Shown one piece after another: positions 36,306 through 60,070 of a DNA stretch of 64,000 nt. The stretch spans positions 248,001-312,000 of the forward strand of contig NIVC01001122.1 of assembly GCA_002269645.1 (NCBI GenBank). The letters run 5' to 3'. Origin of the DNA: Macrostomum lignano. Its lineage: Eukaryota. Position numbers and translations under genes: made by a program. The stretch's first letter is position 1; every line of letters starts with the position of its first letter. Under the pieces are notes generated by a model that saw only the letters and a program-made list of their open reading frames with translations, did not search any database and was not told the DNA's origin.

Positions 36306-39212
36306 ATGGATTCTGGAAATTTTGGTCAGCCCAGTGGTGGAGGGTTTGGCCATGGCCAAGGCTTTGGTCATTCCAATCAGTCAGGTGACAATTTCCAGCA
36401 AAGAAATTTTAATTCAAACAATGGAAGTTATCATCAGCGATGTGGATTTGCCAATGATGGATCAAGTGGAGGTCGTGGTGGCGGCTTTCAAAACAGCCGA
36501 ACGAACAATAATGGCTTCGTCTCGAGTCGGCAGGACTGGTTTGAGCCCGAGAAAGGCCCCGTTGATGGTGCAACTGGGGGTGGACTTGTAGCAGATGGAA
36601 ATGACGGATTTGGAAGGTCTAGTAATTCTGGAGGCTTTGGACAGGCCGGTGGCTTCAGAGATGGCGGCGGTTTTGAAGTATACAACAGTGGTTTCAGAGG
36701 CAGTCGCGGTGGAGGCTTTAGAGGTGGCCGCGGCGGAGGTTTAGAAGATGGTGGAAACGGCGGCTTTGGAAGAGGCGGTGGCCGAGGCTTTGGAAGAGGC
36801 GGTGGTGGAGGCTTTGGAAGAGGCGGTGGTGAAGGTTTTGGAAGAGGCGGTGGTGGAGGCTTTGGAAGAGGCGGTGGTGAAGGTTTTGGGAGAGGCGCCG
36901 GTGGAGGCTTTGGGAGAGGCGGTGGTGAAGGTTTTGGAAGAGGCGGCGGTGGAGGCTTTGGAAGAGGCGGCGGTAGAGGCTTTGAAAGAGGCGGTGGTGG
37001 AGGCTTTGAAAGAAGCGGTGGTGGAGGCTTTGAAAGAGGCGGTGGTGGAGGCTTTGGAAGAGGCGGTGGTGGAGGCTTTGGAAGAGGCGGTGGTGGATTC
37101 GGTTCCAGTAGCAACAGCGGAGGTTTCGGCGGAGGCAACAATAACAAAGATTTAGAAGACAGCGCCGATGGCCATGAAGGATTTGGAAGCGATAGCGGAG
37201 GCGGATTTGGAAGCAGTGGCGGAGGCGGATTTGGAAGCGGTGGTGGAGGCGGATTTGGAGGTGGTAGTGCTCGTGGAGGATTTGGAGGCGGTGGTGGAGG
37301 ATTCGGAGGCGGAGGCAACGCTGCTGGTAACGCCGATCCTGCGGCGCCCAAACGCATTCCGTGGGCGGAAATTCGAGCCAATATGGCCAAGGCGATGTTT
37401 GCGCCATGGGAGAATGAACCGCCCGTCAAGAAAGATTTCTATCAGGAAGTTGAGTCAATTGCTCGAATGACCGACAGTGAAAGACAAGCGTTGTACGCTG
37501 AGCTTAACAATATTACAGTTCAGGATCTAAAAGAAGAGAGTAGCACAAAAAGGTCCATTCCTAATCCAGTGCGCAAGTTCGAAGAGGCCTGGTCCCCCTA
37601 TCCGGGCATCATGCGCGAAATAATGAAGAACGGATTCGAGCGACCAACTCCGATTCAATGCCAGGCGTGGCCTGTGCTGCTCAAAGGCATGGACTTCATC
37701 GGCATTGCTCAGACTGGCACAGGCAAGACGCTTGCCTTCCTGTTGCCGGCATTCATTCACATTGAAGGCCAAGTGAGACCGCGAAAAGAGCGCAATGGCC
37801 CGACTGTCTTGGTGCTGAGTCCGACCCGCGAGCTGGCTCTACAGATTCAAGGCGAAGTGGAGAAATACGCGTACAAGGGCATCCGCTGTGTGTGCGTGTA
37901 TGGCGGCGGCTCCCGTAGGCAGCAGGTGGCTCAAGTAGAGAAAGGCGTTGAAATTGTTGTTGCCACGCCCGGCCGACTCAACGATATTGTTGCTGAGGGC
38001 AAGTTAAATCTATTCCACGTTAGCTACCTCATACTTGATGAAGCTGATCGAATGCTCGACATGGGCTTCGAGCCTCAGATAATCCGCGCCATTTCTAAGA
38101 TCCGACCAGACCGACAGACGGTAATGACATCGGCAACTTGGCCTCCGGGTGTTCGGCGTATCGCTGACAAGTACATGACAGATCCGGTACAGTGCTACGT
38201 TGGTTCTCTTGACCTGGCCGCTGTGCACACGGTCACGCAGTATATTGAGATTGTTGAAGAGGACGATAAGAAGCCATGCATCCTGCGATTTGTTTCCCAG
38301 GAAATGCAGCCAACTGACAAAGTATTGGTATTTGTCAGCCGTAAAATCTACGCCGATCATTTGGCCACGGATATGGTGATGGCTGGGCTAGACGTTGAAA
38401 CGATCCATGGCGATCGAGACCAGGTGAGCGCTTTTGTATGCTGGAATATGTGTAAGACAAAACATTGAGTATGAGCTCTTGTTTTGAACCATTCAGGCAA
38501 ATTATGCGATTTCACAGAAACACCGCATTTTTCGCTAATTTATGCTGTCAGCTGAAAGTTCCGATTCTAATGCATTAATATGTACCCTGTGTCTGATTTA
38601 TGTATAAATCGCCTATCTTATACACTGTCGGTACTTACTATCTCATTATCATACTCCTTGTTCTATTGGGCTCTGACACATACATAGCTTCAAAGGTTTA
38701 GTTACCCTGTGTGTACATGCCTGGCGATGATAAGTTAGGGCAGGGATGCGACACTACTCTAACCCAGCTCCCCTGCAAATATATGCCTGATGCTTGATTT
38801 AGTCTGTTACAATTTGCCACTTCAGCACGATCGTGAGGAGGCCCTGCGCAACTTTCGTAGCGGCGACGTTCGCATTCTGGTCGCCACGGATCTGGCCAGC
38901 CGCGGCCTCGACGTCAAAGACGTTACTCACGTCATTAATATGGACATGCCTAAGAACATGGAAGAGTACGTGCATCGTGTTGGCCGGACTGGCCGCGCCG
39001 GCGCCTCGGGCGTTGCTATCACATTCGTGACCCGCCAGGACTGGACTAAAGTTGGCGAACTAATCAAAATTCTTGAGGAGGCCAACCAGGAGGTGCCTAA
39101 TGAGCTTCGACGCATGGCCGAGCGCTGGGAGCGAAAGAAAGCCGAAGGCGGCGCGAGTTTCGGTCAGCGGCGCAATCGACGCGACGATTATGGCTCTGGA
39201 ATCATTCTGTAG
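36306..39212 (+). CDS. DDX43: DEAD-box RNA helicase, DDX43/DDX53-like core with a long Gly/Phe/Arg-rich N-terminus
   Basis: Exons 36306-38423 and 38826-39212 (phase-0 intron CAG|gtgag...ttcag), 834 aa. Q motif GFERPTPIQ, motif [53 protein letters not shown] and [13 protein letters not shown] fit DDX43 rather than Vasa. Confidence 0.85.
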
Positions 39213-40973
39213 TCGCTTCTGCTCAAGGGTGTCCGCGACCTGGAAAAACAAGGAAATTAAACAAAAACTCGAGAAACCCCAGTAATTGCCAAAGATACCT
39301 GAAAAAAGGAGTAAAAAACAGGAAATCAGTATAGCTTGTTGAACCTAGTAGTCTAAGCTTCAAAAACCCAAAATCTATGGAAATATGACATTTATTATAA
39401 TTTATTGTATCATTTTTCAGGGAAGAGGAAAGATGGTCGGGTATGAATTTTGATTAGTGATACTTTTCCCTACTCACGGGGAATACGCGGACACCCTGTG
39501 ACTACTACTCATGGCAAAGTGAAGCTCGATTTTGCAATTACTGTTTTTTGCCACCCTATGGTCCCTTTATATCCCAAGCTGTTTTGGAAATTATTGTTTT
39601 AACTGCGATGCAATTAATAAGTCAAATGGTGAACTAACTGAATATGCAATGCACATCAGAGTATACTCATACTATGTACTCAAAAATACAAGAAGATCAT
39701 AGAGATGATCTAAAAACATTTGCATTAAATTTGAAATAAAACTGAGAGCTGTTTGTCAGAGGCGGGCGTTGCATCGCGGGATATGATGAGAGATCGCTTT
39801 TATTATTAAGCTTTGTTATCATTGCATTTACTAATTGTTATTTTCCTGTTTCTCTCTCCTTATCTTTTTACTAGTATTAATAAATAGATCGTAATCAGCC
39901 CAAACATTCTTTTTCAGTCTGTAGCCCGATCAGTTTTTATCATATAAATATCAGCGCTAATAACAGTTTCAATTTGTTTTAACTTTCAACTTATCCTACT
40001 TGTTTAATATGTATATCAGTATGTTTTGTATTTTTGTCACGTTTTTTCAATTAAAAAGTGAGGCTGGATTTAACAATTAGACAATATAGATTTTTTTATT
40101 AATTTCGTTGCCACCTCCTACGCGGATTTGCATTTGACAGTTGAGTAGAATTCGATTTAACTTTGCTGTTTTGATTCTCTACTTTCTCTCTGTCCGGTGC
40201 TTATGGCCTACCTAGCTGGATAAAAAAGCTTAGTGTATAAAATCCTGATTTGGTTCTGCGACCTGTTTGAGTCGTCCAAGTTTGCGATGCGGTGTTAGTT
40301 ATTAATGTACTTTCAGGTGAAGTTATTTTCAGCTCTTTAATTAAAGTTGTATAACAAATATATAGTCAGTTTCTGTGTTTATGGTTTAATGGCTTTGGCT
40401 TTGATTTTTTGCTTATAGTCTAATGGGTATAACCTATTCCCAACTATTAGTAAAGTATAGTTTTGATTTTGCCCACAGACATTAGTACATTTTCTACTAT
40501 AATCGTACAGAACTGGTAGAGAAAAACGTCACTGGCAGGATGTGTGAAGTTATAAAAAAGTTGGCCATCGACGCCTGCAGTGCAGCTCCCACGCATCCTT
40601 TTTGTGCTGTTGTCTATGGCCGAATTATCAACTTGCCTGCCCTTTTTTCTGTCTATAGGAAATCTCGCCTTGGCTAACAAAAGCGATATCAGTAAAGGGA
40701 GCACGCACAGCACAGACAAGTCCCTCTTCCTACCATAGACTAAATCTGCTCCAGGCCAAACGAATAAGTTTTCCATTTTTTTAAAAGAGCATTCCAAGCA
40801 GAAATATGTTGCTCCATATGTCAGAACTAAACGCAATGATTATGTAGCTAAAAATCTGCTTGGAGACAGTAAACAAATCCAAGGGTATAAGGAATGGCGG
40901 GGATTCTAACCGATTGCCCTGCTGTTTAAGAGACCTTGGAACAGTTGGCCTTGAAATTTCATTATTGAGTAGA

Positions 40974-41862
40974 TGTTGTATCCCCCTTCCTCGCTGGCAC
41001 GGCCGGGTTGGGCGACGGGTAGCGGTGTCGGGGTTCGGGTACTAGACTGCCCAGGGCTTACGAGCTCGATCGGCGACCCCGAGGCGTACGGACACTTCGG
41101 GGGGAGGTCAAGGTTGAGAAGTCGAGAGAGAGGGGAGGGGCGGCTGTGGGCGGGCGGCCACTCGACAGCCTGGTGAGTCAAGGAAGAGAGAGAGGGCTGC
41201 GGGCGGTCGGCCACTCGACAGCCTGGTGAATCAAGGAAAAGAGAGAGGGCTGTGGGCGGGCGGCCACTCGACAGCCTGGTGAGTCAAGGAAGAGAGAGAG
41301 GGCTGCGGGCGGTCGGCCACTCGACAGCCTGGTGAGTCAGACTGAGGAGAGAGTGAGAGAGAGAGAGATCAGGAGAGCGACCCGAGGAACACAGGCAATT
41401 GTCTCGACAGCTTACCGGGCCGGGTCGATTATAGCACTCATACACGGGAAGGCCGATCGATTGCAATAAATTGAGTCTTCGCAGTAAGAGACCGTCTTTA
41501 CGGCTGATCGCTGGTCACGTTCGTTTATTTATCGCGGTGGGCGCAAATGGGCGCAGGCACGGTGAGAAAAGGGGCGGGGTCTGAGCGTCGCCTTAAATAA
41601 CGAGTAAAAAGGGGCAGGGGCGCAAACAAGGGGGGGAGAAAGGGCTTAAACAATGGAGCTGATTGACAGCTGATTGGCTGCGGCGAGGGGAGGGTGGAAG
41701 CGCGCACGGCCAGGGAGAGGGAGAGAGAGCAGAGGCCCAGCCAATCAGCACGGCTAGCCAAAGGGCTAAACAGCCAAGGCGAGAGAGAGAGAGAAAGAGA
41801 GCAGAGGCTCAGCCAAAGGGCTCATAGCTCCAGACTGGCTTGAGCCGGGGGGGGGGGTAACA
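40974..41862 (-). mobile_element. LTR-like GC-rich element (solo-LTR candidate) containing an SL exon copy
   Basis: TGTT...AACA termini with imperfect terminal inversion (TGTTGTATCCCCC / GGGGGGTAACA); sharp GC island in AT-rich DNA; CCAAT boxes and TATA-like motifs (minus strand TATTTAAG about 41600, ATAAATAAA about 41532); internal ~53-nt repeats; no ORF. No TSD, PBS or PPT found. Confidence 0.5.
41462..41503 (-). ncRNA. Spliced-leader exon copy (SL relic), lacking the terminal AUG and GT donor
   Basis: Minus strand reads CCGTAAAGACGGTCTCTTACTGCGAAGACTCAATTTATTGCA then ATCG. This matches 42 of 44 nt of the Macrostomum lignano SL as I recall it (...TTTATTGCATG) and shows the flatworm SL hallmarks CCGT-n-ACGG hairpin and TTGCA. 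Confidence 0.8.
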
Positions 41863-42068
41863 ATAATCAACTACCAAAGTCAACAACTATCAAAGTGCAC
41901 TTGCACCAAGGGAGCACTGTGACACAGGTCACAACATAGATATAAGATAGTACTGCTAGTAGTATCTCTTGGAATAAAATTAACTGAGTTTGGTAACTCT
42001 TATTCTCATAGTTTGTCTTCCCCGAACAATGTCTCAGTACCACAAATTCACGCCACTCGACACTTCAG

Positions 42069-43391
42069 AGCGATCTAGTACCAGCGCAGACAGCTGCGGC
42101 CGCAGGCGACCCTGCTGACCCTGCGGCTGTTGAAGTTGAGCAGCAGCAGGCTAAGCCACCAGCTCCAGACGATGAGAAACTTTCGCCGCCACCAGCCGCT
42201 GGAGCTGCTGGAGTTGATGTCGACGTTGACCCGGCGTCCCGGTCGGGCTCAAGCGATCACGAAGGCGAAGGAAGCGGTGATAATAAGAGCGTCAGCGACG
42301 ACGGAGACGAAGACGATCGGGATCGGGGCAGTCGGCGGCATCCGCGCAGTCGGCATCACCATCGGCATCATCGACGTCGCCACGGCGGCGATCATCGGCG
42401 GCGTCGGCGTAGTCCAAGCTACAATGAAGACGGCGACGGCAGAGACGACGGCGGAGCTCGAAGTCGGAGCTGCAGTCCCGCCGACAGCCGCAGCCGGAGC
42501 CGCAGTCCAGCTAGAAGCCGCAGTCGGAGTGGCTCCCGCTCCAGCGATCGAAGCCATCGCAGACATCGGCGTCACCGACGGCGTCACGGTCGAAGCCGCG
42601 GACGTGACGAGCGTCATCGTCGGCATCACCGTCATCATCACCGGCGGCATCGGCGGCACCGACGCCGATCAGGTTCTTCGTCTTCCGCATCGTCAGCTGC
42701 TTCTGGCGGCGGCAGCGGCGGCCCAGTCATCAGTCGTGCCGCCTGCGCCAGGCCTGCTGCTTCGACTTCTTGTAGTGCGTCGGCGACTCAGCACCAACTG
42801 GTTGTCTCGCAGCCGCAGGAGAATCCCCAGGTGTTGGAGCAGCGTCGACAGCGCCTTCTGGCTCTGCAGGCGGCCGCTATCAAGCAGCAAATACAGCACA
42901 AGCAGCAGCAGCAGGCGGTTGCGGCGGCCGCAGCTACGGGCATCGAGGTGCCGAAATTCTACAATCCCGGCTCGGTTGACGCCAACAGGTTCGCCCAGCA
43001 GGAGCAAAAGCGTCGCCTGTTGTGGTCGAAGGCTGGGCAGAATTCTAGAAAAACTGAAACGGCCTGGTCGCGTCAGTTGAGCGCAGTTAATGGCGATACA
43101 AGCAAATTCTGCAAGCTGATGGGCATGCGCGGAGCCGCTAGCAGTCACCAACAGACTGATGCTGATCAGCAAGCTAGCGAAGCTGGCCCGCCTACTTCAT
43201 CAGCGAATCCAACTGGTAACAGTTCGGCTACTCCGGCTGATAGCGACAAGGCTCGCCAACGCCAGGAGGAGATGTTCAACAAATTGGAGACGCAGTACGT
43301 GCAGGCGCAGCACAATACTGGCGGAATGCGCAGCGCTGGCCTGGGCTTCGGCTTGGGTTCTTCTAGTCATCCGGCTGCTCACCCGAAGTGA
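42069..43391 (+). CDS. RSRC2: Arginine/serine-rich coiled-coil protein 2 (RSRC2)-like; coding exon without ATG
   Basis: I translated a stop-free frame from the acceptor cacttcag|AGC GAT CTA (42069) to TGA (43391): acidic region, RS/RH-rich tract, then VPKFYNPGSVDANRFAQQEQKRRLLW, KFCKLMG, QEEMFNKLETQY and GLGFG, matching the RSRC2 C-terminal (SMAP-like) region. The ORF track shows only the part from GTG 42831. Confidence 0.88.
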   Translation, partial: SDLVPAQTAAAAGDPADPAAVEVEQQQAKPPAPDDEKLSPPPAAGAAGVDVDVDPASRSGSSDHEGEGSGDNKSVSDDGDEDDRDRGSRRHPRSRHHHRHHRRRHGGDHRRRRRSPSYNEDGDGRDDGGARSRSCSPADSRSRSRSPARSRSRSGSRSSDRSHRRHRRHRRRHGRSRGRDERHRRHHRHHHRRHRRHRRRSGSSSSASSAASGGGSGGPVISRAACARPAASTSCSASATQHQLVVSQPQENPQVLEQRRQRLLALQAAAIKQQIQHKQQQQAVAAAAATGIEVPKFYNPGSVDANRFAQQEQKRRLLWSKAGQNSRKTETAWSRQLSAVNGDTSKFCKLMGMRGAASSHQQTDADQQASEAGPPTSSANPTGNSSATPADSDKARQRQEEMFNKLETQYVQAQHNTGGMRSAGLGFGLGSSSHPAAHPK

Positions 43392-43901
43392 GCTAAGGGA
43401 GTGTGTGCATTCCTTCAGTTAATTTATGCTCATTAGGTCGGCAAATTGTAAGAATTTCGTGATCTCTGTAATAATTCACTTAAAGTATAGCCGCAGTCTC
43501 GTTTAGTGCGTATGAATTAAGCATTTAGATATTGGGTGTTTGTTATTGTTATTTATTACTAAACTGTCATTATTTCATGTAAAAATGATTCATCTCGAAA
43601 AGTGATAATGTAGGCATCTTATGATTTTGCTTGTCCACATTTATACTTTCAATGTCGCATGTTAATTACTATATATAAAATCTGAGCACCCTACCTATTC
43701 ATTGATTGCAATGTTGCTTTAAATCACTTCAATCTCCCATTTTCCAACTAAAGTATATAAATTACTTCATTTCTACGTCAATGCTTGTCATTGGCGTTAC
43801 GATGAGATGCATCCCATTTTTTCTATTCATTTCAATTAATACAATTCTCTTGGGTAGCAACTGTAGTTTAATAAAGATGGATACTAAAAATACTGAAAAT
43901 A

Positions 43902-45209
43902 CGAGGGATACTCCAAAAGTTTTGCAATTCAACCACTTGCGCAAGTCGCACAATCTTCAAAACCAACTCTCTGTACAATAAACATGTACATAGTCACCAC
44001 CTCAATTTTCAAGTTAATTCATACATATACGCCTGCTCAGCCCCCAGTCAAAGTCAGAGACTCCTTAACTGTACAGCTGCAGCCATGGAATTGAATCGTG
44101 AGCAGAATCGGCTACTAATTTGGTACTGCCACAAGCGAAAGCTCACGGCGCTTGAGACTCATGCCGAGCTACTGGCAACATTGGAGGCTCAAGCGCCGTC
44201 ATATGCTACGGTTACATGCTGGTACCGCGAGTTCCAGGCCGGCAGGACCAGCTTTTCTGACGACCCCCGGCCCGGGAGACCTCCGACAGCAGTGACGGAG
44301 GAAAACATCGTTGCAGTGCAGGAGCTGATTCATCAGGATCCGCGAATCACCACGGACATGCTAGCTATGAATGTCGGCATTGGATCGGCAGCGGTCGATA
44401 CGATTCTACACGATCACCTGAGAGTCAGGAAGCTTTGTGCCCGATGGATACCCCACATCCTGACAGATGCTAAAAAACAGGCCCGCATGGAGTTCTGTCA
44501 GTTTCTCATCGATCGATATGAGCACGGGAGCCATCAGCGCCGCTCTGAGGTCATCACTGGTGATGAGACGTTTCTGTATCATTTTGACGTCGAGACAAAG
44601 CGCAGCAGTGCAGAGTGGGTGCCGGAAGGTGGTCAACGACCCCTGAAAGCAAGGCGGTCCCGGTCCCAGGGCAAGCGGATGTTTGCCATCTTCTTCGACT
44701 CACAAGGCGTGGTGGCGATGGTGAAGCTGGAGGGTCAAGCTACAGTCACTGCTCGATGGTACACTGAAGAGTGCTTGCCAGTCGTGATCGACAGCGTGAC
44801 CCAGAGGGCGCCAAGGACGGGAATGCGAGGGCGGAAGCTTCACCATGACAACGCCCCCGCCCACACGGCTGCTGCAACTCGAGCGTTCCTGGACCAAGAG
44901 GGCATTTCAACGCTACCACACCCGGCCTACTCACCAGACCTCGCCCCCTGCGACTTCTGGCTCTTTCCAGAAATCAAAAAGTCGCTTAGGGGGCGCAGGT
45001 TTCAGTCCGACGAGGAGCTGGAGCAGGCGGCGAAGGAGGCGATTGACGGCATCCCAATTGAAGACTTCCAGGGCTTGATGAACAAGTGGCTCGGACGAGC
45101 GCACAAGTGTTTGCAGTTCCGGGGAGCCTACTTTGAAGGATTGTAATAGAAAAGTTTGGCAAAATTAACTTTAAATAGTCGAATTGCAAAACTTTTAGAG
45201 TATCCCTCG
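43902..45209 (+). mobile_element. Full-length, apparently intact mariner transposon (DD34D); transposase ORF 44085-45146
   Basis: 29-bp TIRs CGAGGGATACTCCAAAAGTTTTGCAATTC with 1 mismatch; TA on both flanks; uninterrupted 353-aa ORF with WIPHIL, TGDET, HHDNA-x34-D and YSPDLAPCDF. Confidence 0.96.
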
Positions 45210-45597
45210 TAGATGCTGCAAAATAGAGGTTGGGGTGGGGGGTGGGCAGTTGTGGCTTGTGAACGAAAAATTGGTTGGGGGTTGTTGTGCGATTTACACA
45301 CTCGAGGGCCAACCCCCAGGCACAGAGAGTAGCCGATGTACACCCTGTGTGAGCGTGTGTACGAGTGCATGCCTGTGTACAGTGTTAGCGCGCTTGTGTG
45401 CTCTCAGGAGTCAGCGGAATGGCTTGTGTGACACAGTCCTGCAATTATACTGCTCCAGGCTGTTAGACTTGCACTTACTGTTCTAAGTACAATTTAAATA
45501 AACAATGACAATGAGTTGCTAACGCACCTGTCAGCAAGTTAACCCTTTCGCCATGCATTTTCAGCTAGCGTTTAAAATCTATTTATAGCACACAAAA

Positions 45598-52968: not shown

Positions 52969-55900
52969 ATGGCCGGGGTTGTTCTGGAAACTCTGAGCAC
53001 GCGCAAGCTGGTCTGCTTTGGCATTATTCTGCTGCTGCTGCAGGTTGGCTGTTTTCTACTAGGCGGACTGATTGCGCCCAAGCCGTACGCGCACGAGGAC
53101 ATGCTGGGCAATAAGTGTGTAGACTGGGACGCCAACGACACTGACAAATGGTTCTTCACTCGCGGCCCGGGCCACTGCAAGCCTGTGGCCGATGGTTCTA
53201 ACCATTTCGAGTTCATCAAAAACCTGCACCAATTAGCTAAAGATGAAGGCAAACGGGTGCCCAACGCTTCGCAGATTGTGTTCAATTTTCAATTTCCTTT
53301 GCCGCGGGATAATATGGAGTTTAGCATGTCTGCTCTCTTCCAGGTGAGACTAATGAGATTAGTGCAAATATGGTATCTGATGGCATGTTTAAAGTTGGTG
53401 AATGAAATCCTGAAAAGTGTTAGACCATTTCATCCTTCGGTATGCCATTGTTAGACCAGTTTGGTCATTCAGTATGCCGCTGTTAGACCAGTTTGGTCAT
53501 TCAGTATGCCATTGTTAGACCAGTTTGGTCATTCGGTATGCCATTGTCAGACCAGTTTGGTCATTCGGTATGCCATTGTCAGACCAGTTTGGTCATTCGG
53601 TATGCCATTGTCAGACCAGTTTGGTCATTCGGTATGCCATTGTCAGACCAGTTTGGTCATTCGTATGCCAATGTCAGACCAGTTTGGTCATTCGGTATGC
53701 CATTGTTAGACCAGTTTGGTCATTCAGTATGATGCTGTCAGACCAGTTTGGTCATTCAGTATGCCGCTGTCAGACCAGTTTGGTCATTCAGTATGCCATT
53801 GTTAGACCAGTTTGGTAATTCAGTATGCGATTGTCAGACCAGTTTGGTCATTCAGTATGCCGCTGTCAGACCAGTTTGGTCATTCGGTATGCCATTGTTA
53901 GACCAGTTTGGTCATTCAGTATGATGCTGTCAGACCAGTTTGGTCATTCAGTATGCCATTGTTAGACCAGTTTGGTAATTCAGTATGCAATTGTCAGACC
54001 AGTTTGGTCATTCAGTATGCCATTGTTAGACCAGTTTGGTAATTCAGTATGCGATTGTCAGACCAGTTTGGTCATTCAGTATGCCGCTGTCAGACCAGTT
54101 TGGTCATTCGTATGCCAATGTCAGACCAGTTTGGTCATTCGGTATGCCATTGTTAGACCAGTTTGGTCATTCAGTATGATGCTGTCAGACCAGTTTGGTA
54201 ATTCAGTATGCAATTGTCAGACCAGTTTGGTCATTCAGTATGCCGCTGTCAGACCAGTTTGGTCATTCGGTATGCCGCTGTCAGACCAGTTTGGTCATTT
54301 CGTATGCCGCTGCTCGAATCCCCAATATTTTCAAGGTACCTGTAATTTGATGATGTACTTTAGCTGCTGAAACTCTCAATTCGAACAGGAGATGGTGGCC
54401 GTAGTTCGCATCGAGTCGCAGTACATGAAATCGCTGCCAGGCTCGGAGATTAAGCCCGACAGTCAGATCGAGCTGCACGCCCGCCTTGGCTATCGAGACG
54501 ACTCGGACCCGCCGGGTGTCTGGCACGAGATGGTACAATCGCGCGAGACTCGTTCGCTTCGCTGCCAACTGGAACAGTCAGCCGACGGAGATACGGGCGA
54601 ATACGAGTGCGAGCCACAGCCGCTGTTCAGTCTGGGCTCTGTTGCTCACGCTCAGTACCTGTTGAACATCCGGGTTCCGGTCACCGATTATTCTAATAAA
54701 AATATCGGCCTACTGCGCGATATTAGCGTTGTAGAATTCCATCAGAATGGCGGCTTCACTCTTGTCTGGCTTGGCATGAAGACTGCCCTGTTCCCCGTGC
54801 TGTGCGGCCTGCTAATCTGGTTCTGCTGGCGGGTCAGGGCCCAGGCCAGGCCGTGGACTCTGCTGGAGCGATCGGCTTTGGGCCTGGGCATCGCACTGTC
54901 GTGCCTGAATTGCCCAGTCGAGTGGCTGAGTCTGACAGTGCTGCGAGCTCCAGTCTGGCTGCTGGTGTCCGATCTGAGACACGGCATGTTCTACAGCGGC
55001 CTGCTGGCCTTCTGGATTGTCTTCACTGGCGAGCACACCATGGATGGCGGGCCGAAGAACAGGTTCATGCTCTATTGGAAACAGTTTCTCGGCGTGGCCG
55101 TTGCCGGCGCCTGCCTGCTAATCTTTGACTTGTCGGAGAGGGGCGTGCAGATTTACAATCCGTTCTACACGGTTTGGAGTACACCGGACGCTTCTAGGTG
55201 AGATTTATTTTTTTTTCATTAATTATATGTTTAACATTAGGAGGCCAGATCGATACCCTGTTTCGATTCCGCGGCTACATTAATTTTGGGCTTGTGCACG
55301 AAAACGGCTGTACCATGGATGTCATATATAATATTGTATTTGGCCTGTTGGCTGTTGTCTCATTTTGAAGCTGCAATAATCGCCGATGGCTTTCTACAAG
55401 CAGGCCCATTAAATTTGCATCTTTATCCTGCTTTAACGACTCCAGACTGCTTCAGGCTCCAAATTATTTTTAAAAAAATGACCGGTTTTTCAGTTCCAGT
55501 TCCCGATAACATAAAAATAACAAAAAGATCGATTTAGCAGAAAACACTTGAATGTAAAACGATTTTTTAGTCGAAACTCAAATTTACCATCTGAAATCTG
55601 TGTATATATAAAAAATCAGCTTCACAGACCTTACTGTTGCTTCAGTGCAGGTCTCCAATCTTGCATAGCGTGATGTTGAAACGTCAGTAACTGCAGGATT
55701 TCGCATACAGGCTAAATAAATCTACCCCGGAACTACGAAATACCCAACAACAACTGATAACCAATTTTATTTTTGCAATTTACCATCTGAAATCTGTGTT
55801 TATATAAAAAAACCGGCTTCACAGACCTTACTGTTGCTTCAGTGCAGGTCTCCAATCAAGCATAGCGTGATGTTGAAACGTCAGAAACTGTACGATTTCG

Positions 55901-58900
55901 TAACTAAGGATTTGTAACTTCGAATTTGTAAAATAACCAGCTTATACTCGTAGGTAATTATAGAACAACAGCAACAAAAAATACGCAGTCGCCCCAGTAG
56001 TCAGTGGAGGGAGCGTCAGATGACATGTCGAAGCGCCAGTAGGCGAATAATCAATTGTCCGGCCTATTGATCGACAGTGTCGGGCGCCCCAACGTTGCTC
56101 AGGATGCAGTCCACGTATCTCTGTGTCCTCGGTCACTTGAGCCCGCCTGAACTGTTCTAGCAAAGTGAGCGGCAGGATGTCCTGGACAGGCTAGGGCAAT
56201 AGCCCGGATCACGTAGCGCCTGTCAGTTGGAGTCGCCGTCTCGCTGTAGGATGGTACATCCTTGAACAGGACGCTTTTGTCAGCCTGAACGCATGGAGCA
56301 GCCCCGCGGGCCGAGTGATCCAATTGTTTAGCTGTTGCTCCAGCGTGACCGTTAACATCGGGACGCTAGAATTCGCGCGACTGGATTTCGCGCGATCTGG
56401 CATTCGAGCGACTGCATTTGCGCGACTGGAAATCGCACGACCTGGAATTGAAGCGCGCGACTTCTTTCTAGCGACTGGATTTCACACCACTGGATTTAAA
56501 TCCAGTCGATCGAAATCCGGTTGCGCGAAATTCAGTCGCGCGAAATCCAGTCGCACGAAATTCTACGTCGCGCGAAATCTAGTCGCTTGAAGTAAGTCGC
56601 GAGAAATGATGCAGTCGAATTCAATTTCAAGTCGCCTAAAATCATCCGATTCGTGCAAAATCCTGGTGCACAGAAGACAATTAGCGCAAAATCCAGTAGC
56701 GCGAATTCTAGCGTCCCTTGAACATCCACGTCTCTGCAGTGTTGTCGAGCAACACGGTCTCAACAGCCGAGCCCTCTGACGATCGGGCAGCGCTTTGGAC
56801 TGAAGGATGGCGCGAATCGACCGGTAGGCCGTCCAGGCAAGTCCTCTCGATCTAGATCTGCGTCGCCGAATTTCGTCCTCAACGTTGGGCATCAGACCGT
56901 CGAGGTGAACCGCTGACAGCGCGCGAGGTTGGTCGTCTGCCCGTCTGCGCCGCGGCATTACGCTGTGGTGACGGCAGACGGCTTGTCTGACCTGTCTGAA
57001 ACTTCGTTTAGGAGTGCTACACAGAGCGACACATTCTAGCACCGTTCCTCTTCGTGCTGCTCCTGGCATGGATTGTGCAGCTTCGGAACGGACCCCCTTC
57101 AGCAGGCGACGGCTTCCTGCTGCGCAGACACATCGGTCGCCGCCACAACGAGAAGCGCCTGAGCGGTTCTAGGCTACGCCGACGACCTCACACTCCTGTC
57201 CTCAACTGTTGATGGCACACAGCGCTAGATTAAGGTTGGTCGAGGTGGCATCAAAGCGTCGGCCTATTTGTCGACACGCTGAAAGACCGAGGCGCTGGCA
57301 TGACCAGCGAGCCGATATCCCAGGCGGAGCTGACATATCACCATACAGCGATATGATGGCGTCAACTACATGTAGCTGCTGGGGACTCGACAGGTTCGTA
57401 GGACAAAACTCGTAGGACAAAAAGCACTGAATCAAATGCCATAATAATTAAAAACCCTAAAAAATGCCGAGTAAAGGCCGAGACCTTTCACAGAGTCGTG
57501 AAAGGTCTCGGCCCCTCGGAGTTGTAACTCCTTTAATTTCCTATTTTTCCGAGGTTCAGCTTGTACATTGTTTCATTTTACGAAATTGTACCTTTAAATG
57601 CATAATCACATGCAAGAGCCCGCGTCACCGCGCGGGACAGGGGCTGACATCGGGACAACTGTGCATGTCCCCCCTGGTCTGAGTGAAAGCTATGAAAAAG
57701 CGAACAAAATCAGTGTCTGTTTAGCAATAAAATTGAGTGTTAGAAACACCGATATAAAAAATAATGTAGGAATTTCGTCACTTAGAATTCTTGACTTTGT
57801 CCCCCACCATAAAATCCATAGCGACGCGCTCACGCCCCTGATCACATGCAAGTTAAGAATTGCATCTAATTGTGCAAAATATTTACATGTTTAATATTTG
57901 ATCAATTAGATTTGTAAGGTCTGTAGAGAAATTACAATTTAACAATTCAAGGTGCACTATTGGATTGAATTACGTATTGTCTGTATTAAGTTATTGATAG
58001 AATTTTTACGACAATTACATGCATTCTTCTGGAGAAGTAACATCATAATCTTATAAATTACATGTATCCTATCTTATATTTTTATCTCAATATTTTTATT
58101 TCACATGTAATATTCAAAACCCATGTTTTATAAGGACCTTTAACTTTTACAAATTTTTTAGCGTCAATTGAAACCATTATTTGAATTGCTATTAGTTAAT
58201 TTATTAATTTACCACAATATTTTTGAGTTCAAGTAATTGTAGTTAACTGATTGTAGTTAACTACTGTCTTTATCAAGTGTAAAAAGAACGAAACATTTTT
58301 TATAATTGTCTACTAGTTTCTTTGTTTATTCATTCTACATATTAATTTTGTTTAATCATATTTAGAAGAGTTCTTACTTCATATTGTTATCGTCACATTA
58401 TCACATACAACGATAATGATAGATCGAGTTGACTCCGAAATCGAACCGTGGTTTTTTGAATATTCGCCGCTATAATAGTACTTGTTTCTACCACAAAATA
58501 TAAATAAAATAAGAAAACGTTAGGATAATATTGTATTTTATTCATTTTTTAAAACATTAATGTCAACTTTATTCTTAAAGCAGTAAACGTTTGTTTTAAT
58601 ATGCGTTGTAACATATTCCGTTACGGCGGGATTTTAAAGTACGATTTGGGAACTGGAACTGAAAAACCGGTCATGAAAAAAAATATTTTAGGACTGAAGA
58701 TTTCAGGCCGATAAACAGATGGGGTTTTCCTCTTGCACGCTTGTGTCTGAATTTAACCTTTCCTTACTTCTCTCTCATTGGCTGAGCTAGATTGGGCCTG
58801 CCCATCTAGGCTGAGTTTCGTCCGTCTAACTCTAACCTCTCTCCTTACTTCTCTCTCATTGGCTGAGCTAGATTGGGCCTGCCCATCTAGACTGAGTTTC

Positions 58901-60070
58901 GTCCGTCTAACTCTAACCTCTCTCCTTACTTCTCTCTCATTGGCTGAGCTAGATTGGGCCTGCCCATCTAGACTGAGTTTCGTCCGTCTAACTCTAACCT
59001 CTCTCCTTACTTCTCTCTCATTGGCTGAGCTAGATTGGGCCTGCCCATCTAGACTGAGTTTCGTCCGTCTAACTCTAACCTCTCTCATTACTTCTCTCTC
59101 ATTGGCTGAGCTAGATTGGGCCTGCCCATCTAGACTGAGTTTCGTCCGTCTAACTCTAACCTCTCTCCTTACTTCTCTCTCATTGGCTGAGCTAGATTGG
59201 GCCTGCCCATCTAGACTGAGTTTCGTCCGTCTGACTTTAAACTTGTCTTCTTACTTCTCTCTCATTGGCTGAGCTAGATTGTCCCTCCGTAGACCGTAGT
59301 GACACTACGCAGACAAACTACTGAAAAACAGAGTAGACGCTCTACTTTTTCACAAATTTTATGCAAGTGAAATTTCTGATAGTTATTTTACAAATAGTGT
59401 TTGTGATTGGACTTTAAAACTCACATAATGACTCGGCTCCCTTCAATTCAGGTTCGCCCTGGCCTCAATGATAATCGCCGGCATTTCAATGGCCGCCTAC
59501 GCCCTACTATTATTGGTGCTAATTGTTCGAGCTCTACGCGGCATCCTAGAGAAGCGGCGGCATTTGCCCAGCCTGCCGCAGGCGCGCCGCCTGTTCTACT
59601 CTGGCGCCATAGTCCGATTCTGCGTGTTCCTGGGCTATACCGCCCTGTGCGCCGCCCTGACCGTGGCATTCTACATTGTCATGGAATTGGACGAAAGCCA
59701 TTGGAAATGGAGCGAAGAGGGCCACTCGTTGGAGTATAGCAGCGCCTTTGTCACCGGAGTGTACGGCATGTGGAATGTGTACGTGTGCGCCATCATCATC
59801 CTGTACGCGCCCAGCACCAAGCGGATTGCCGGGGCCAGCGGCATCGGAGACGCGGCCGCTGTGCCAACCGAGGCTGCCAACCTGTTCACTACCGAGAGCG
59901 ATCAGCAGGTTGCCTACAGCTGCGCTAGCGAGCGAGTTCGAGTTCTCAATCCCGGCTCAGCTGCTGCTGCCGGCTCGGCGGCGGCTGACTCGGCTGGCGC
60001 CTCCGCCTCCTCGGCTGTCGGGGCCGCCAGCGAGACGCTGGCCTTCGTGCAGAAGGCGGCTCAGGATTGA
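52969..60070 (+). CDS. WLS: Wntless / Evi / GPR177 Wnt secretion factor
   Basis: Exons 52969-53343, 54389-55197, 59452-60070, 600 aa. MAGVVLETLSTRKL, HQNGGFTLVW, LNCPVEWLS, SDLRHGMFY...FWIVFTGEH, ERGVQIYNPFYTVW, GVYGMWNVYV...LYAPS. Confidence 0.96.
53420..54310. repeat. 32-nt minisatellite, Wntless intron 1
   Basis: Unit TCAGACCAGTTTGGTCATTCGGTATGCCATTG. Confidence 0.94.
55581..55884. repeat. ~107-bp direct duplication (55581-55687 and 55777-55884)
   Basis: AATTTACCATCTGAAATCTGTG...GTTGAAACGTCAG present twice. Confidence 0.85.
55990..57390 (-). mobile_element. Degenerate RTE-like non-LTR retrotransposon with its RT core (about 57001-57295) inverted
   Basis: Plus strand: GVL..DT.LAPFLFVLLL and VLGYADDLTLLSS. 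Minus strand: thumb and C-terminal region HLDGLMP...EDEIRRRR..GLAWTAYRSIR...AVETVLL, RRRLQL...PVQD. Many frameshifts. Lies in Wntless intron 2. Confidence 0.8.
56360..56717. mobile_element. Mutator-like MITE nested in the LINE
   Basis: TIR GGGACGCTAGAATTCGCGC(g/t)ACTGGATTT (29 bp, 1 mismatch); degenerate 9-bp flanks gttaacatc/ttgaacatc; internal cgcgcga and aatccagtcg repeats. Confidence 0.75.
58757..59283. repeat. 81-nt minisatellite, Wntless intron 2
   Basis: About 6.4 near-identical copies with period 81 (GCTGAG at 58781, 58862, ...). Confidence 0.95.

What the first reader, a model, noticed from the sequence alone, without database searches (positions are those of the whole stretch)
40974..41862. 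LTR-like element carrying a spliced-leader exon at its predicted transcription start
Seen: the minus strand of 41503-41462 reads CCGTAAAGACGGTCTCTTACTGCGAAGACTCAATTTATTGCA inside an 889-bp TG...CA GC-rich element with CCAAT boxes. An ATAAATAAA motif lies about 29-21 nt upstream of the first SL base, which is TATA geometry. A strong donor CG|GTAAGC lies 46 nt after the SL (41415). The terminal AUG and GT donor of a true SL RNA gene are replaced by AATCG, and no Sm site is visible. Established (recalled, needs alignment): the M. lignano SL is this sequence plus TG. Inference: a retroelement has captured the host SL, either by reverse transcription of a trans-spliced transcript (like dinoflagellate relict SLs) or as mimicry, so that its RNA would begin with an SL-like 5' leader without trans-splicing and could also splice that leader in cis. 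I know of elements that insert into SL genes (NeSL, SLACS) but not of an SL carried inside an LTR.
Basis: partly seen in the sequence, partly recalled or inferred. Interest (0 to 1): 0.9.

Follow-up and report, generated by a model that had tools for sequence, protein, structure and literature searches.

The report
Stray spliced-leader copy in repeat-like block
A perfect 43-base copy of the flatworm Macrostomum spliced leader, with none of the rest of a leader-RNA gene, sits inside a 0.9-kb GC-rich non-coding block; it is probably a reverse-transcribed relic, and whether it belongs to a mobile-element family that starts its RNA with the host leader could not be tested here.

Summary
The minus strand of 41504-41462 matches 43 of the 45 known bases of the Macrostomum spliced leader (SL) exactly. 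The match starts at the SL's 5'-most known base and stops 2 nt before its 3' end.

It is not an SL RNA gene. Two canonical SL RNA genes recovered from public contigs share only these 43 nt with the window. The window lacks the GU donor at the SL end, the Sm-like site and the three-hairpin fold.

The copy lies 358 nt into an 889-bp, 61% GC, non-coding block with TG...CA ends. CCAAT, GC-box and A/T-rich motifs lie upstream of it.

The LTR reading is unproven:
- there is no second copy, gag-pol, PBS/PPT or target-site duplication in the window;
- no relative exists in any searchable collection, because the source genome is not held;
- the TATA geometry (p about 0.04) and the GTAAG donor (about background) are weak, and a mirror-image A/T run lies on the other strand.

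A 2025 paper already reports 597 partial-SL loci next to LTR/LINE elements in parasitic flatworms and offers the same explanation.

Verdict: a new member of a known kind (an RNA-derived relic SL). The "SL-leader LTR family" idea remains open at a probability of about 0.25.

The parts
41462..41504 (-). 43-nt copy of the Macrostomum spliced-leader exon (GCCGTAAAGACGGTCTCTTACTGCGAAGACTCAATTTATTGCA). It lacks the last two SL bases (TG) and everything downstream of the exon.
   Evidence: unique, 0 expected. (published SLs). (100% over exactly 43 nt to the canonical SL genes L004 and L007, nothing beyond).
40974..41862 (-). 889-bp GC-rich (61%) non-coding block with TGTT...AACA ends. It is a candidate solo LTR or other insertion, and its orientation is not established.
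   Evidence: composition edges, ends. (no Pfam domain in its ORFs). (no target-site duplication). (no other copy in the window).
41524..41532 (-). ATAAATAAA, 20-28 nt upstream of the first SL base. It is TATA-like and also contains the AATAAA hexamer.
   Evidence: Positional chance is about 0.044.
41567..41619 (-). Two GC-box-like motifs (GGGGCGGGG / GGGGCAGGG on the + strand), at about -63..-75 and -103..-115 from the SL start.
   Evidence: family D7. Read directly from the sequence.
41669..41749 (.). Pair of CCAAT motifs forming a perfect 12-nt inverted repeat (GCTGATTGGCTG / CAGCCAATCAGC), at -165..-245 from the SL start.
   Evidence: inverted repeat I3..
41453..41510 (-). Direct repeat CGATCAG ... 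CGATCGG bracketing the SL (+AT). Without the SL, the flanks read as a (GATC)3-like run.
   Evidence: A shared 5-mer in 9-nt flanks has p about 0.036.
41411..41416 (-). GGTAAG donor-like site, 46 nt after the SL.
   Evidence: It matches the GT[G/A]AG cis-donor motif of M. lignano but occurs at background frequency.
41142..41339 (.). 53-bp tandem repeat, 3.7 copies, 93% matches. Three copies carry a TGAGTCA (AP-1-like) site.
40944..40967 (+). Left arm of a 24-nt imperfect inverted repeat (18/24) that hugs the GC-rich block.
   Evidence: inverted repeat I1. (28/2000 shuffles and 2/255 real-sequence controls reach the score)..
41861..41884 (-). Right arm of the same inverted repeat. It overlaps the terminal CA of the block.

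Best explanation
This is a relic, RNA-derived copy of the Macrostomum SL exon, not an SL RNA gene. It is embedded in a 0.9-kb GC-rich non-coding insertion, most likely a solo LTR or a similar repeat. The block lies in the intergenic space 150 bp upstream of an SL-trans-spliced SMAP-domain gene.

Most likely origin (inferred): a reverse transcriptase was copying an RNA whose 5' end lay at about ATCGATCGG, roughly 28 nt downstream of the A/T-rich box. It switched template onto an SL-bearing RNA (SL RNA or any trans-spliced mRNA) 2 nt before the SL's 3' end and ran to that RNA's 5' end. Alternatively, it copied an RNA that had been trans-spliced, and TG was lost later. The product was fixed in DNA, which placed the SL at the boundary between promoter and transcribed part.

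The copy cannot donate a leader, because it has no GU at the exon end, no Sm site and no SL RNA fold. If the upstream CCAAT / GC-box / A+T-box promoter fires on the minus strand, the transcript would simply begin with an SL-like leader that lacks the AUG.

Shown: the identity, extent and non-gene nature of the copy.
Inferred: RNA-mediated origin, the mobile nature of the host block, and any transcription.
For: - Exact 43-nt identity to the SL, unique in the window.
- The published SLs of three Macrostomum species are identical, and the longest one starts at the same G.
- Two independent canonical SL RNA genes (L004, L007) share a conserved CTTTG upstream, GTAAG, two hairpins with compensatory changes and an AUAUUUUUAG Sm-like site. 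The window matches none of this outside the exon.
- The canonical RNAs fold with z = -3.0 and -4.1. The window equivalent gives z = +0.6.
- Homology that begins at the transcript's 5' end and excludes the intron is the signature of a cDNA, not of a DNA duplication.
- The block has sharp composition edges, TGTT/AACA ends, internal tandem repeats and flanking 24-nt inverted arms (p about 0.01). It is non-coding.
- Motif order on the minus strand is CCAAT, GC box, A/T box, then SL.
- Precedent: 597 partial-SL loci next to LTR/LINE elements in parasitic flatworms, interpreted as integration of trans-spliced retrotransposon RNAs.
Against: - Only one copy could be examined.
- No target-site duplication, partner LTR, PBS/PPT or gag-pol was found, so 'LTR' rests on weak features.
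- The SL is 2 nt short of the splice junction, so a plain copy of a trans-spliced RNA needs an extra TG loss.
- The flanking CGATC direct repeat (p about 0.036) fits a one-off filler insertion into an existing sequence equally well.
- There is no AATAAA downstream of the SL on the minus strand. The antisense strand has ATTATA, then about 30 nt, then antisense SL with AATAAA, so the block could be oriented the other way.
- The block could be the native promoter of the adjacent SMAP gene rather than a mobile element.
- 43/43 identity fits a recent event, and also fits selection or gene conversion.
Confidence: 0.55

Rival explanations
1. The block is the LTR of an active or recently active LTR-retrotransposon family. 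Every copy carries the SL at the U3/R boundary, so element RNAs start with a host-like leader without trans-splicing (mimicry that could aid translation, stability or escape from surveillance) and may splice that leader in cis.
For: - The SL begins 20-28 nt downstream of an A/T-rich box, with GC boxes and CCAAT boxes upstream.
- The SL is complete at its 5' end and perfectly conserved.
- The SL's AUG is missing, as expected if an upstream AUG were selected against.
- The block has TGTT...AACA ends.
- LTR elements make up 21% of the M. lignano genome.
- Partial SLs next to LTRs are reported in other flatworms.
Against: - There is no second copy, target-site duplication or internal region.
- There is no poly(A) signal downstream of the proposed start on that strand.
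- The donor is at background frequency and there is no [T/C]TNCAG acceptor.
- A mirror-image A/T run lies on the other strand.
- The flanking CGATC repeat suggests a local insertion.
- No homologous ORF exists in 5.8 G / 1.8 G protein sets, although the source genome is absent from them.
Confidence: 0.25
2. One-off filler. A short SL cDNA or RNA fragment was patched into a break, or inserted by stray target-primed reverse transcription, in a pre-existing GC-rich promoter or repeat. It has no function and no family.
For: - The insert is only the SL (+AT) and is bracketed by CGATCAG / CGATCGG. Removing it restores a (GATC)3-like run.
- SL RNA and SL-capped mRNAs are very abundant templates; 30% of genes are trans-spliced.
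- The block lies 150 bp from the acceptor of a trans-spliced gene and may be that gene's promoter.
Against: - The flanking repeat is short (p about 0.036) and may be a pre-existing microsatellite.
- The position relative to the A/T box would be a coincidence (p about 0.044).
- There is no poly(A) or long target-site duplication, as classic LINE-mediated insertions have.
Confidence: 0.15
3. The 5' end of a retro-copied trans-spliced transcript. The SL plus the 488 bp downstream would be a processed cDNA, and the 359 bp upstream would be unrelated target DNA.
For: - The SL is 5'-complete and followed by non-intron sequence.
- This is the dinoflagellate relict-SL pattern (PMC5585692 and PMC6050394).
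Against: - The junction is not ...GCATG|exon.
- There is no poly(A) tail or target-site duplication at the downstream edge.
- The up- and downstream halves share composition and GAGAG-type repeats, and they are jointly bracketed by inverted arms.
- There is no ORF or Pfam domain downstream.
Confidence: 0.04
4. A functional or decayed SL RNA gene copy that arose by DNA duplication.
For: It contains 43/45 nt of the SL.
Against: - There is no GU at the exon end, no Sm-like site and no hairpins (z = +0.6).
- There is no similarity to the conserved up- or downstream sequence of two canonical genes, while the exon itself has zero substitutions.
Confidence: 0.01

Closest known systems
Partial-SL loci associated with LTR and LINE elements in parasitic flatworms (Calvelo et al. 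2025, PMC12582326)
   Same: An SL sequence sits in the genome without any other SL RNA feature, next to or inside repeat elements, in Platyhelminthes. The proposed origin is also the same: integration of reverse-transcribed, SL-bearing retroelement RNA.
   Different: Those loci were only counted and discarded, in cestodes and trematodes, and were described as 'partial' leaders. Here the leader is 5'-complete (43/45 nt), lies in a free-living macrostomid, and sits at a promoter-like distance from an A/T box. Association with a classified TE is not shown here.
Relict spliced leaders / mRNA recycling in dinoflagellates (Slamovits and Keeling 2008; PMC5585692, PMC6050394)
   Same: An SL copy is fixed in DNA through reverse transcription of SL-bearing RNA.
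   Different: Dinoflagellate relics sit at the 5' end of retro-copied protein genes, are usually truncated at their 5' end, and are re-trans-spliced. Here there is no coding sequence downstream, the 5' end is complete and the 3' end is truncated.
Canonical Macrostomum SL RNA gene (Ustyantsev and Berezikov 2021, PMC8629364; L004 and L007 here)
   Same: Identical first 43 nt.
   Different: The real gene is about 109 nt, with ATG|GTAAG, three hairpins and an Sm-like site. None of this is present in the window.
SL-gene-specific non-LTR retrotransposons (SLACS, CZAR, CRE, NeSL-1). Recalled knowledge, not tested against sequences.
   Same: A physical link between a retroelement and SL sequence.
   Different: Those elements insert into SL RNA genes, so the SL gene flanks the element. 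Here the SL fragment is inside the block, no SL gene flanks are present, and no RT/endonuclease ORF exists.
snRNA-L1 chimeric retrocopies made by template switching (U6/L1 type). Recalled knowledge.
   Same: The 5' part is a small nuclear RNA copied right up to its own 5' end, and it is fused to an unrelated downstream sequence.
   Different: Those have poly(A) tails and 10-20 bp target-site duplications. Neither is seen here.

Membership tests
SL RNA gene (flatworm) | SL exon ends in AUG followed directly by a GU(AAG) donor | tested here: not met
   The window reads ...TTGCA|ATCGATCGG. The canonical genes read ...TTGCATG|GTAAGACACCG.
SL RNA gene (flatworm) | Sm-like site between two 3' hairpins, and a three-hairpin fold | tested here: not met
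   L004 and L007 fold with z = -3.0 and -4.1 and carry AUAUUUUUAG. The window's 108 nt give z = +0.6 and have no U-run. There is no Rfam hit.
SL RNA gene (flatworm) | Homology to the conserved flanks and intron of bona fide genes | tested here: not met
   Identity is confined to 43 nt.
LTR of an LTR retrotransposon (solo LTR) | TG...CA ends with short terminal inverted repeat | tested here: met
   TGTT(A)CCCCC ... GGGGG(ATAC)AACA. This is weak evidence, because the boundaries were chosen by eye.
LTR of an LTR retrotransposon (solo LTR) | 4-6 bp target-site duplication | tested here: not met
   No exact 4-6 bp duplication for any TG/CA boundary pair within +/-35 nt of the edges.
LTR of an LTR retrotransposon (solo LTR) | Partner LTR, PBS, PPT, gag-pol | tested here: not met
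   There are no dispersed repeats in the window. The neighbours are a helicase, a SMAP gene, a mariner element and ATP5B. No tRNA-complementary site adjoins the block. A solo LTR would lack these features, so this does not exclude the family.
LTR of an LTR retrotransposon (solo LTR) | Multiple dispersed copies in the genome | not testable with these tools
   The source genome is absent from all collections. The viral-contig hits were chance 19-21-mers.
LTR of an LTR retrotransposon (solo LTR) | U3-R-U5 signals: promoter, then poly(A) signal downstream of the start | tested here: inconclusive
   The minus strand has CCAAT, GC box and A/T box upstream of the SL, but no poly(A) hexamer downstream. 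The plus strand has ATTATA followed by AATAAA.
Relict / retro-copied SL (RNA-derived SL copy) | SL in DNA without the SL RNA intron, with homology starting at the RNA 5' end | tested here: met
Relict / retro-copied SL (RNA-derived SL copy) | SL joined to the downstream sequence exactly at the splice junction (...ATG|exon) | tested here: not met
   The copy ends 2 nt early. It is compatible with a template switch or a later TG deletion.
Relict / retro-copied SL (RNA-derived SL copy) | Poly(A) tail and target-site duplication of a LINE-mediated retrocopy | tested here: not met
   Only a 5-7 nt CGATC repeat brackets the SL itself.
SL-gene-targeting retrotransposons (SLACS/CZAR/NeSL) | Element with an RT ORF interrupting an SL RNA gene | tested here: not met
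   There is no RT/EN ORF and no SL gene flanks.

The most novel reading that the evidence does not exclude
The block is the LTR of a Macrostomum retrotransposon family that has fixed the host spliced leader at the first transcribed base. Its Pol II transcripts would then carry the SL sequence without trans-splicing and without the SL's AUG. This would be a natural case of a mobile element mimicking the 5' leader that marks about 30% of host mRNAs. It would also be a natural experiment separating the effect of the SL sequence from that of its trimethylguanosine cap. A still more speculative variant (about 3%): read on the + strand, the 43-nt antisense SL lies in the outron of the adjacent trans-spliced SMAP gene and tethers SL RNA.
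Probability: 0.25. Interest if true: 0.75.

Novelty: new member of a known kind. Interest (0 to 1): 0.4.

Why it matters
If the copy is only a relic, it is a clean, datable example of SL-bearing RNA being written back into a flatworm genome. It is also a caution for annotation: reads from such a locus look trans-spliced after SL trimming. SL BLAST searches that demand 100% of the 35-mer miss it, and looser ones could mistake it for an SL gene.

If the block proves to be a family whose copies all begin their RNA with the SL, it would show a retroelement borrowing the host's universal leader. It would then allow a direct test of whether the SL sequence alone confers translational or stability advantages.

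Tried and rejected
- Second copy or fragment of the block in the window: none found by the repeat finder or by blastn with word 9.
- Exact look-up of the block's two longest ORFs in public assemblies: not on record.
- Concatenated six-frame ORFs of the block against 5.8 G proteins: no hit.
- HMMER of the 125-aa frame against 1.8 G representatives: only unrelated repeat proteins.
- Homeologous loci through neighbouring genes:
  - The SMAP ORF gave one 65% hit, in a Logan run.
  - The ATP5B exon gave at most 91% eukaryotic hits, and the top hit is a true bacterial contig.
  - The mariner transposase is not on record.
  - The source genome is therefore not in these collections.
- SL 29-mer in JGI metagenomes: four trans-spliced mRNA contigs and one canonical SL gene. 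These were useful as references but are not copies of the block.
- SL 26-mer in prokaryotic genomes: one contaminant contig with a canonical SL gene.
- Viral contigs: no SL. Block-specific 19-23-mers gave only chance matches.
- Rfam: no family for this RNA.
- Supplements of the M. lignano LTR paper are not held. The Wasik 2015 paper is not held. No paper contains the SL-ATCGATCGG junction.
- Idea dropped: that the 'Mlig013257.g1' remark in PMC8629364 documents a genomic SL copy. It only says that a trans-spliced mRNA was mistaken for the SL RNA. The window's ATP5B start does not match those coordinates convincingly.

Full report
**1. Observation**

The published M. lignano SL consensus is CCGTAAAGACGGTCTCTTACTGCGAAGACTCAATTTATTGCATG (PMC5173321). 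The 35-nt form used later is its 3' part (PMC8629364). So the recalled statement "this sequence plus TG" is correct.

The SLs assembled for M. cliftonense (GCCGT..., 45 nt) and M. hystrix are the same. The SL therefore identifies the genus but not the species. The window also has the extra 5' G, so identity spans 43 nt (41504-41462).

The other details also hold:
- ATAAATAAA lies at -29..-21.
- GGTAAG lies 46 nt after the SL.
- AATCG replaces ATG|GT.
- CCAAT motifs are present.
- The block is 889 bp, 61% GC, with TG...CA ends and sharp composition edges.

**2. It is not an SL RNA gene**

One metagenome scan and one scan of prokaryotic genome contigs with the SL core returned two canonical SL RNA genes from environmental or contaminant Macrostomum-like DNA.
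- L004 is JGI contig Ga0302322_100095745.
- L007 is a contig binned in a Flavobacteriaceae MAG, next to a U1 snRNA gene.
- The same metagenome scan also returned four metatranscriptome contigs that begin with SL...GCATG+mRNA.

The two genes share CTTTG upstream of the SL, ATG|GTAAGACACCG, a hairpin with compensatory changes, an AUAUUUUUAG Sm-like site and a last hairpin. They fold with z = -3.0 and -4.1.

The window aligns to them over exactly the 43 exon bases at 100% identity and nowhere else. Its equivalent 108 nt do not fold better than shuffles (z = +0.6), and Rfam finds nothing. Homology that starts at the 5'-most known base of the transcript and excludes both promoter and intron argues for an RNA (cDNA) origin rather than a DNA duplication. 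That last step is inference.

**3. What surrounds it**

The block lies between + strand host genes.
- A DEAD-box helicase spans 36306-39212.
- A SMAP-domain (RSRC2-like) gene follows, and its 459-codon ORF opens at an AG acceptor (42010-42011).
- That ORF has no in-frame ATG for about 370 codons, but it is in frame with the AUG that the SL would donate.
- The block ends 149 bp upstream of that acceptor.
- Further on are a complete mariner-like element (43900-45211) and the ATP synthase beta gene.

No gag, pol, RT or integrase is nearby. The block's own ORFs have no Pfam match. The 1.7 kb downstream on the minus strand is AT-rich and featureless, and no tRNA genes were found.

**4. Anatomy of the block**

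Read on the minus strand, the order is as follows:
- TGTTACCCCCCCCCC at the 5' end;
- CT/GA microsatellite-like repeats;
- two CCAAT motifs forming a perfect 12-nt inverted pair (-165..-245);
- two GC-box-like motifs (-63..-115);
- TTATTTAA (-96);
- ATAAATAAA (-28..-20);
- the SL (+1..+43);
- ATCGATCGG;
- a 9-codon ATG-ORF;
- GGTAAG (+89);
- 3.7 copies of a 53-bp repeat, three of them carrying a TGAGTCA site;
- ...GGGGGATACAACA at the 3' end.

A 24-nt imperfect inverted repeat (18/24) hugs the two edges. Only 28 of 2000 shuffles and 2 of 255 real-sequence controls reach its score. This suggests the whole block is one inserted unit, or that it entered a palindromic target.

**5. How strong is the LTR/TSS reading?**

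For it:
- TG...CA ends with a short inverted repeat;
- size, GC contrast and internal repeats;
- the classical promoter order upstream of the SL;
- LTR elements make up 21% of the M. lignano genome.

Against it:
- No target-site duplication exists for any TG/CA boundary pair.
- No partner, PBS, PPT or internal region was found, and the window holds no other copy.
- No poly(A) hexamer lies downstream of the SL on the minus strand.
- ATAAATAAA itself contains AATAAA.
- On the plus strand an ATTATA run lies about 30 nt before the other SL edge, and the antisense SL supplies AATAAA. An LTR read in the opposite orientation, or a promoter of the SMAP gene, is therefore equally consistent.
- The A/T box position has p about 0.044.
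- GTRAG is at background frequency (2 in 889 nt against 1.8 per kb), and there is no [T/C]TNCAG acceptor.
- The SL (+AT) is bracketed by CGATCAG / CGATCGG (p about 0.036). Deleting it restores a (GATC)3-like run, which fits a local insertion, microhomology or a pre-existing microsatellite.

**6. Search for relatives**

Every route available was tried, and none gave a copy of the block. The routes were exact ORF look-ups, a six-frame protein search, an exhaustive HMMER search, and viral, metagenome and genome DNA scans.

The reason is coverage. The neighbouring SMAP, ATP5B and mariner proteins have no near-identical entries, so the source genome is not held.

**7. Mechanism**

Shown: a 5'-complete, 3'-truncated SL exon copy with no SL RNA function.

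Inferred as most likely: capture during reverse transcription, by one of three routes.
- (a) A template switch from the 5' end of an RNA starting near ATCGATCGG onto an SL-bearing RNA, 2 nt before the SL end. This naturally puts the SL at the former start site, about 28 nt from the A/T box, and explains the missing TG.
- (b) Reverse transcription of an RNA that had been trans-spliced, followed by loss of TG, which also removes an upstream AUG.
- (c) A filler insertion at a break.

For an LTR element, (a) or (b) would require the minus-strand strong-stop DNA, with its unpaired SL tail, to resume on U3. That is rare but feasible, and the new LTR would then regenerate the SL in every progeny copy.

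**8. Comparison and novelty**

Calvelo et al. 2025 discarded 597 SL-bearing loci in 24 cestode and trematode genomes because they lay within 500 bp of LTR/LINE elements and had only partial leaders. They proposed integration of trans-spliced retrotransposon RNA. Dinoflagellate relict SLs are the classic parallel.

The present locus is therefore a new member of a known kind. Its distinctive points are its completeness at the 5' end, its perfect identity and its promoter-like context in a free-living macrostomid.

The stronger claim is a family of LTRs that begin their RNA with the host leader. It is not excluded, and I give it about 0.25.

**9. Verdict**

Interest is 0.4. A simple genome-wide BLAST and existing 5'-end data would settle the matter.

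Noticed in passing
window 42010-43391 (+): The SMAP-domain (RSRC2-like) ORF of 459 codons opens directly after an AG acceptor and has no in-frame ATG for about 370 codons. The AUG at the 3' end of the SL (...GCATG|TTTGTC) is in frame. The gene is therefore probably SL-trans-spliced and initiates on the leader's AUG.
   Followed up: partly
window 43900-45211: A complete mariner-like element, with 39-nt terminal inverted repeats (90%), TA at both ends and an intact 353-aa transposase with HTH_48/DDE domains. It lies between the SMAP gene and ATP synthase beta.
   Followed up: partly
window 1-22500: About a third of the window is a patchwork of more than a dozen different tandem satellite arrays, with periods of 8, 14, 17, 21, 22, 27, 29, 32, 33 and 34 nt. 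Further arrays lie at 36635-37186 (inside the helicase's GGGFGRGGG-repeat coding region), 53364-54429 and 58677-59324.
   Followed up: no
L007 1121-1696 (JAGQZA010000190.1): A contig binned in a Flavobacteriaceae MAG carries a U1 snRNA gene (Rfam 151.7 bits) and, 300 bp downstream, a canonical Macrostomum-type SL RNA gene. This is flatworm DNA contaminating a bacterial bin, and it shows U1-SL gene linkage.
   Followed up: partly
L004 615-722 and 1774-2922 (Ga0302322_100095745): A JGI metagenome contig holds a canonical SL RNA gene about 1 kb upstream of a Na/K-ATPase beta-chain gene. A partial GCCGTAAA duplicate lies 14 nt upstream of the SL.
   Followed up: partly
They could be terminal inverted repeats of a non-LTR type element or a palindromic target site.
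   Followed up: partly
window 41428-41471 (+): Read on the plus strand, an ATTATA run precedes the antisense SL by about 30 nt, and the antisense SL contains the poly(A) hexamer AATAAA. This mirrors the minus-strand geometry and makes the orientation of any promoter ambiguous.
   Followed up: partly
L008 (GCA_050746265.1 JBOGLO010000425.1): The top-scoring hit for the flatworm ATP synthase beta exon (456 bits, no identity printed) is a genuine bacterial atpD-atpC contig, not flatworm DNA. The reason for its odd ranking was not pursued.
   Followed up: no
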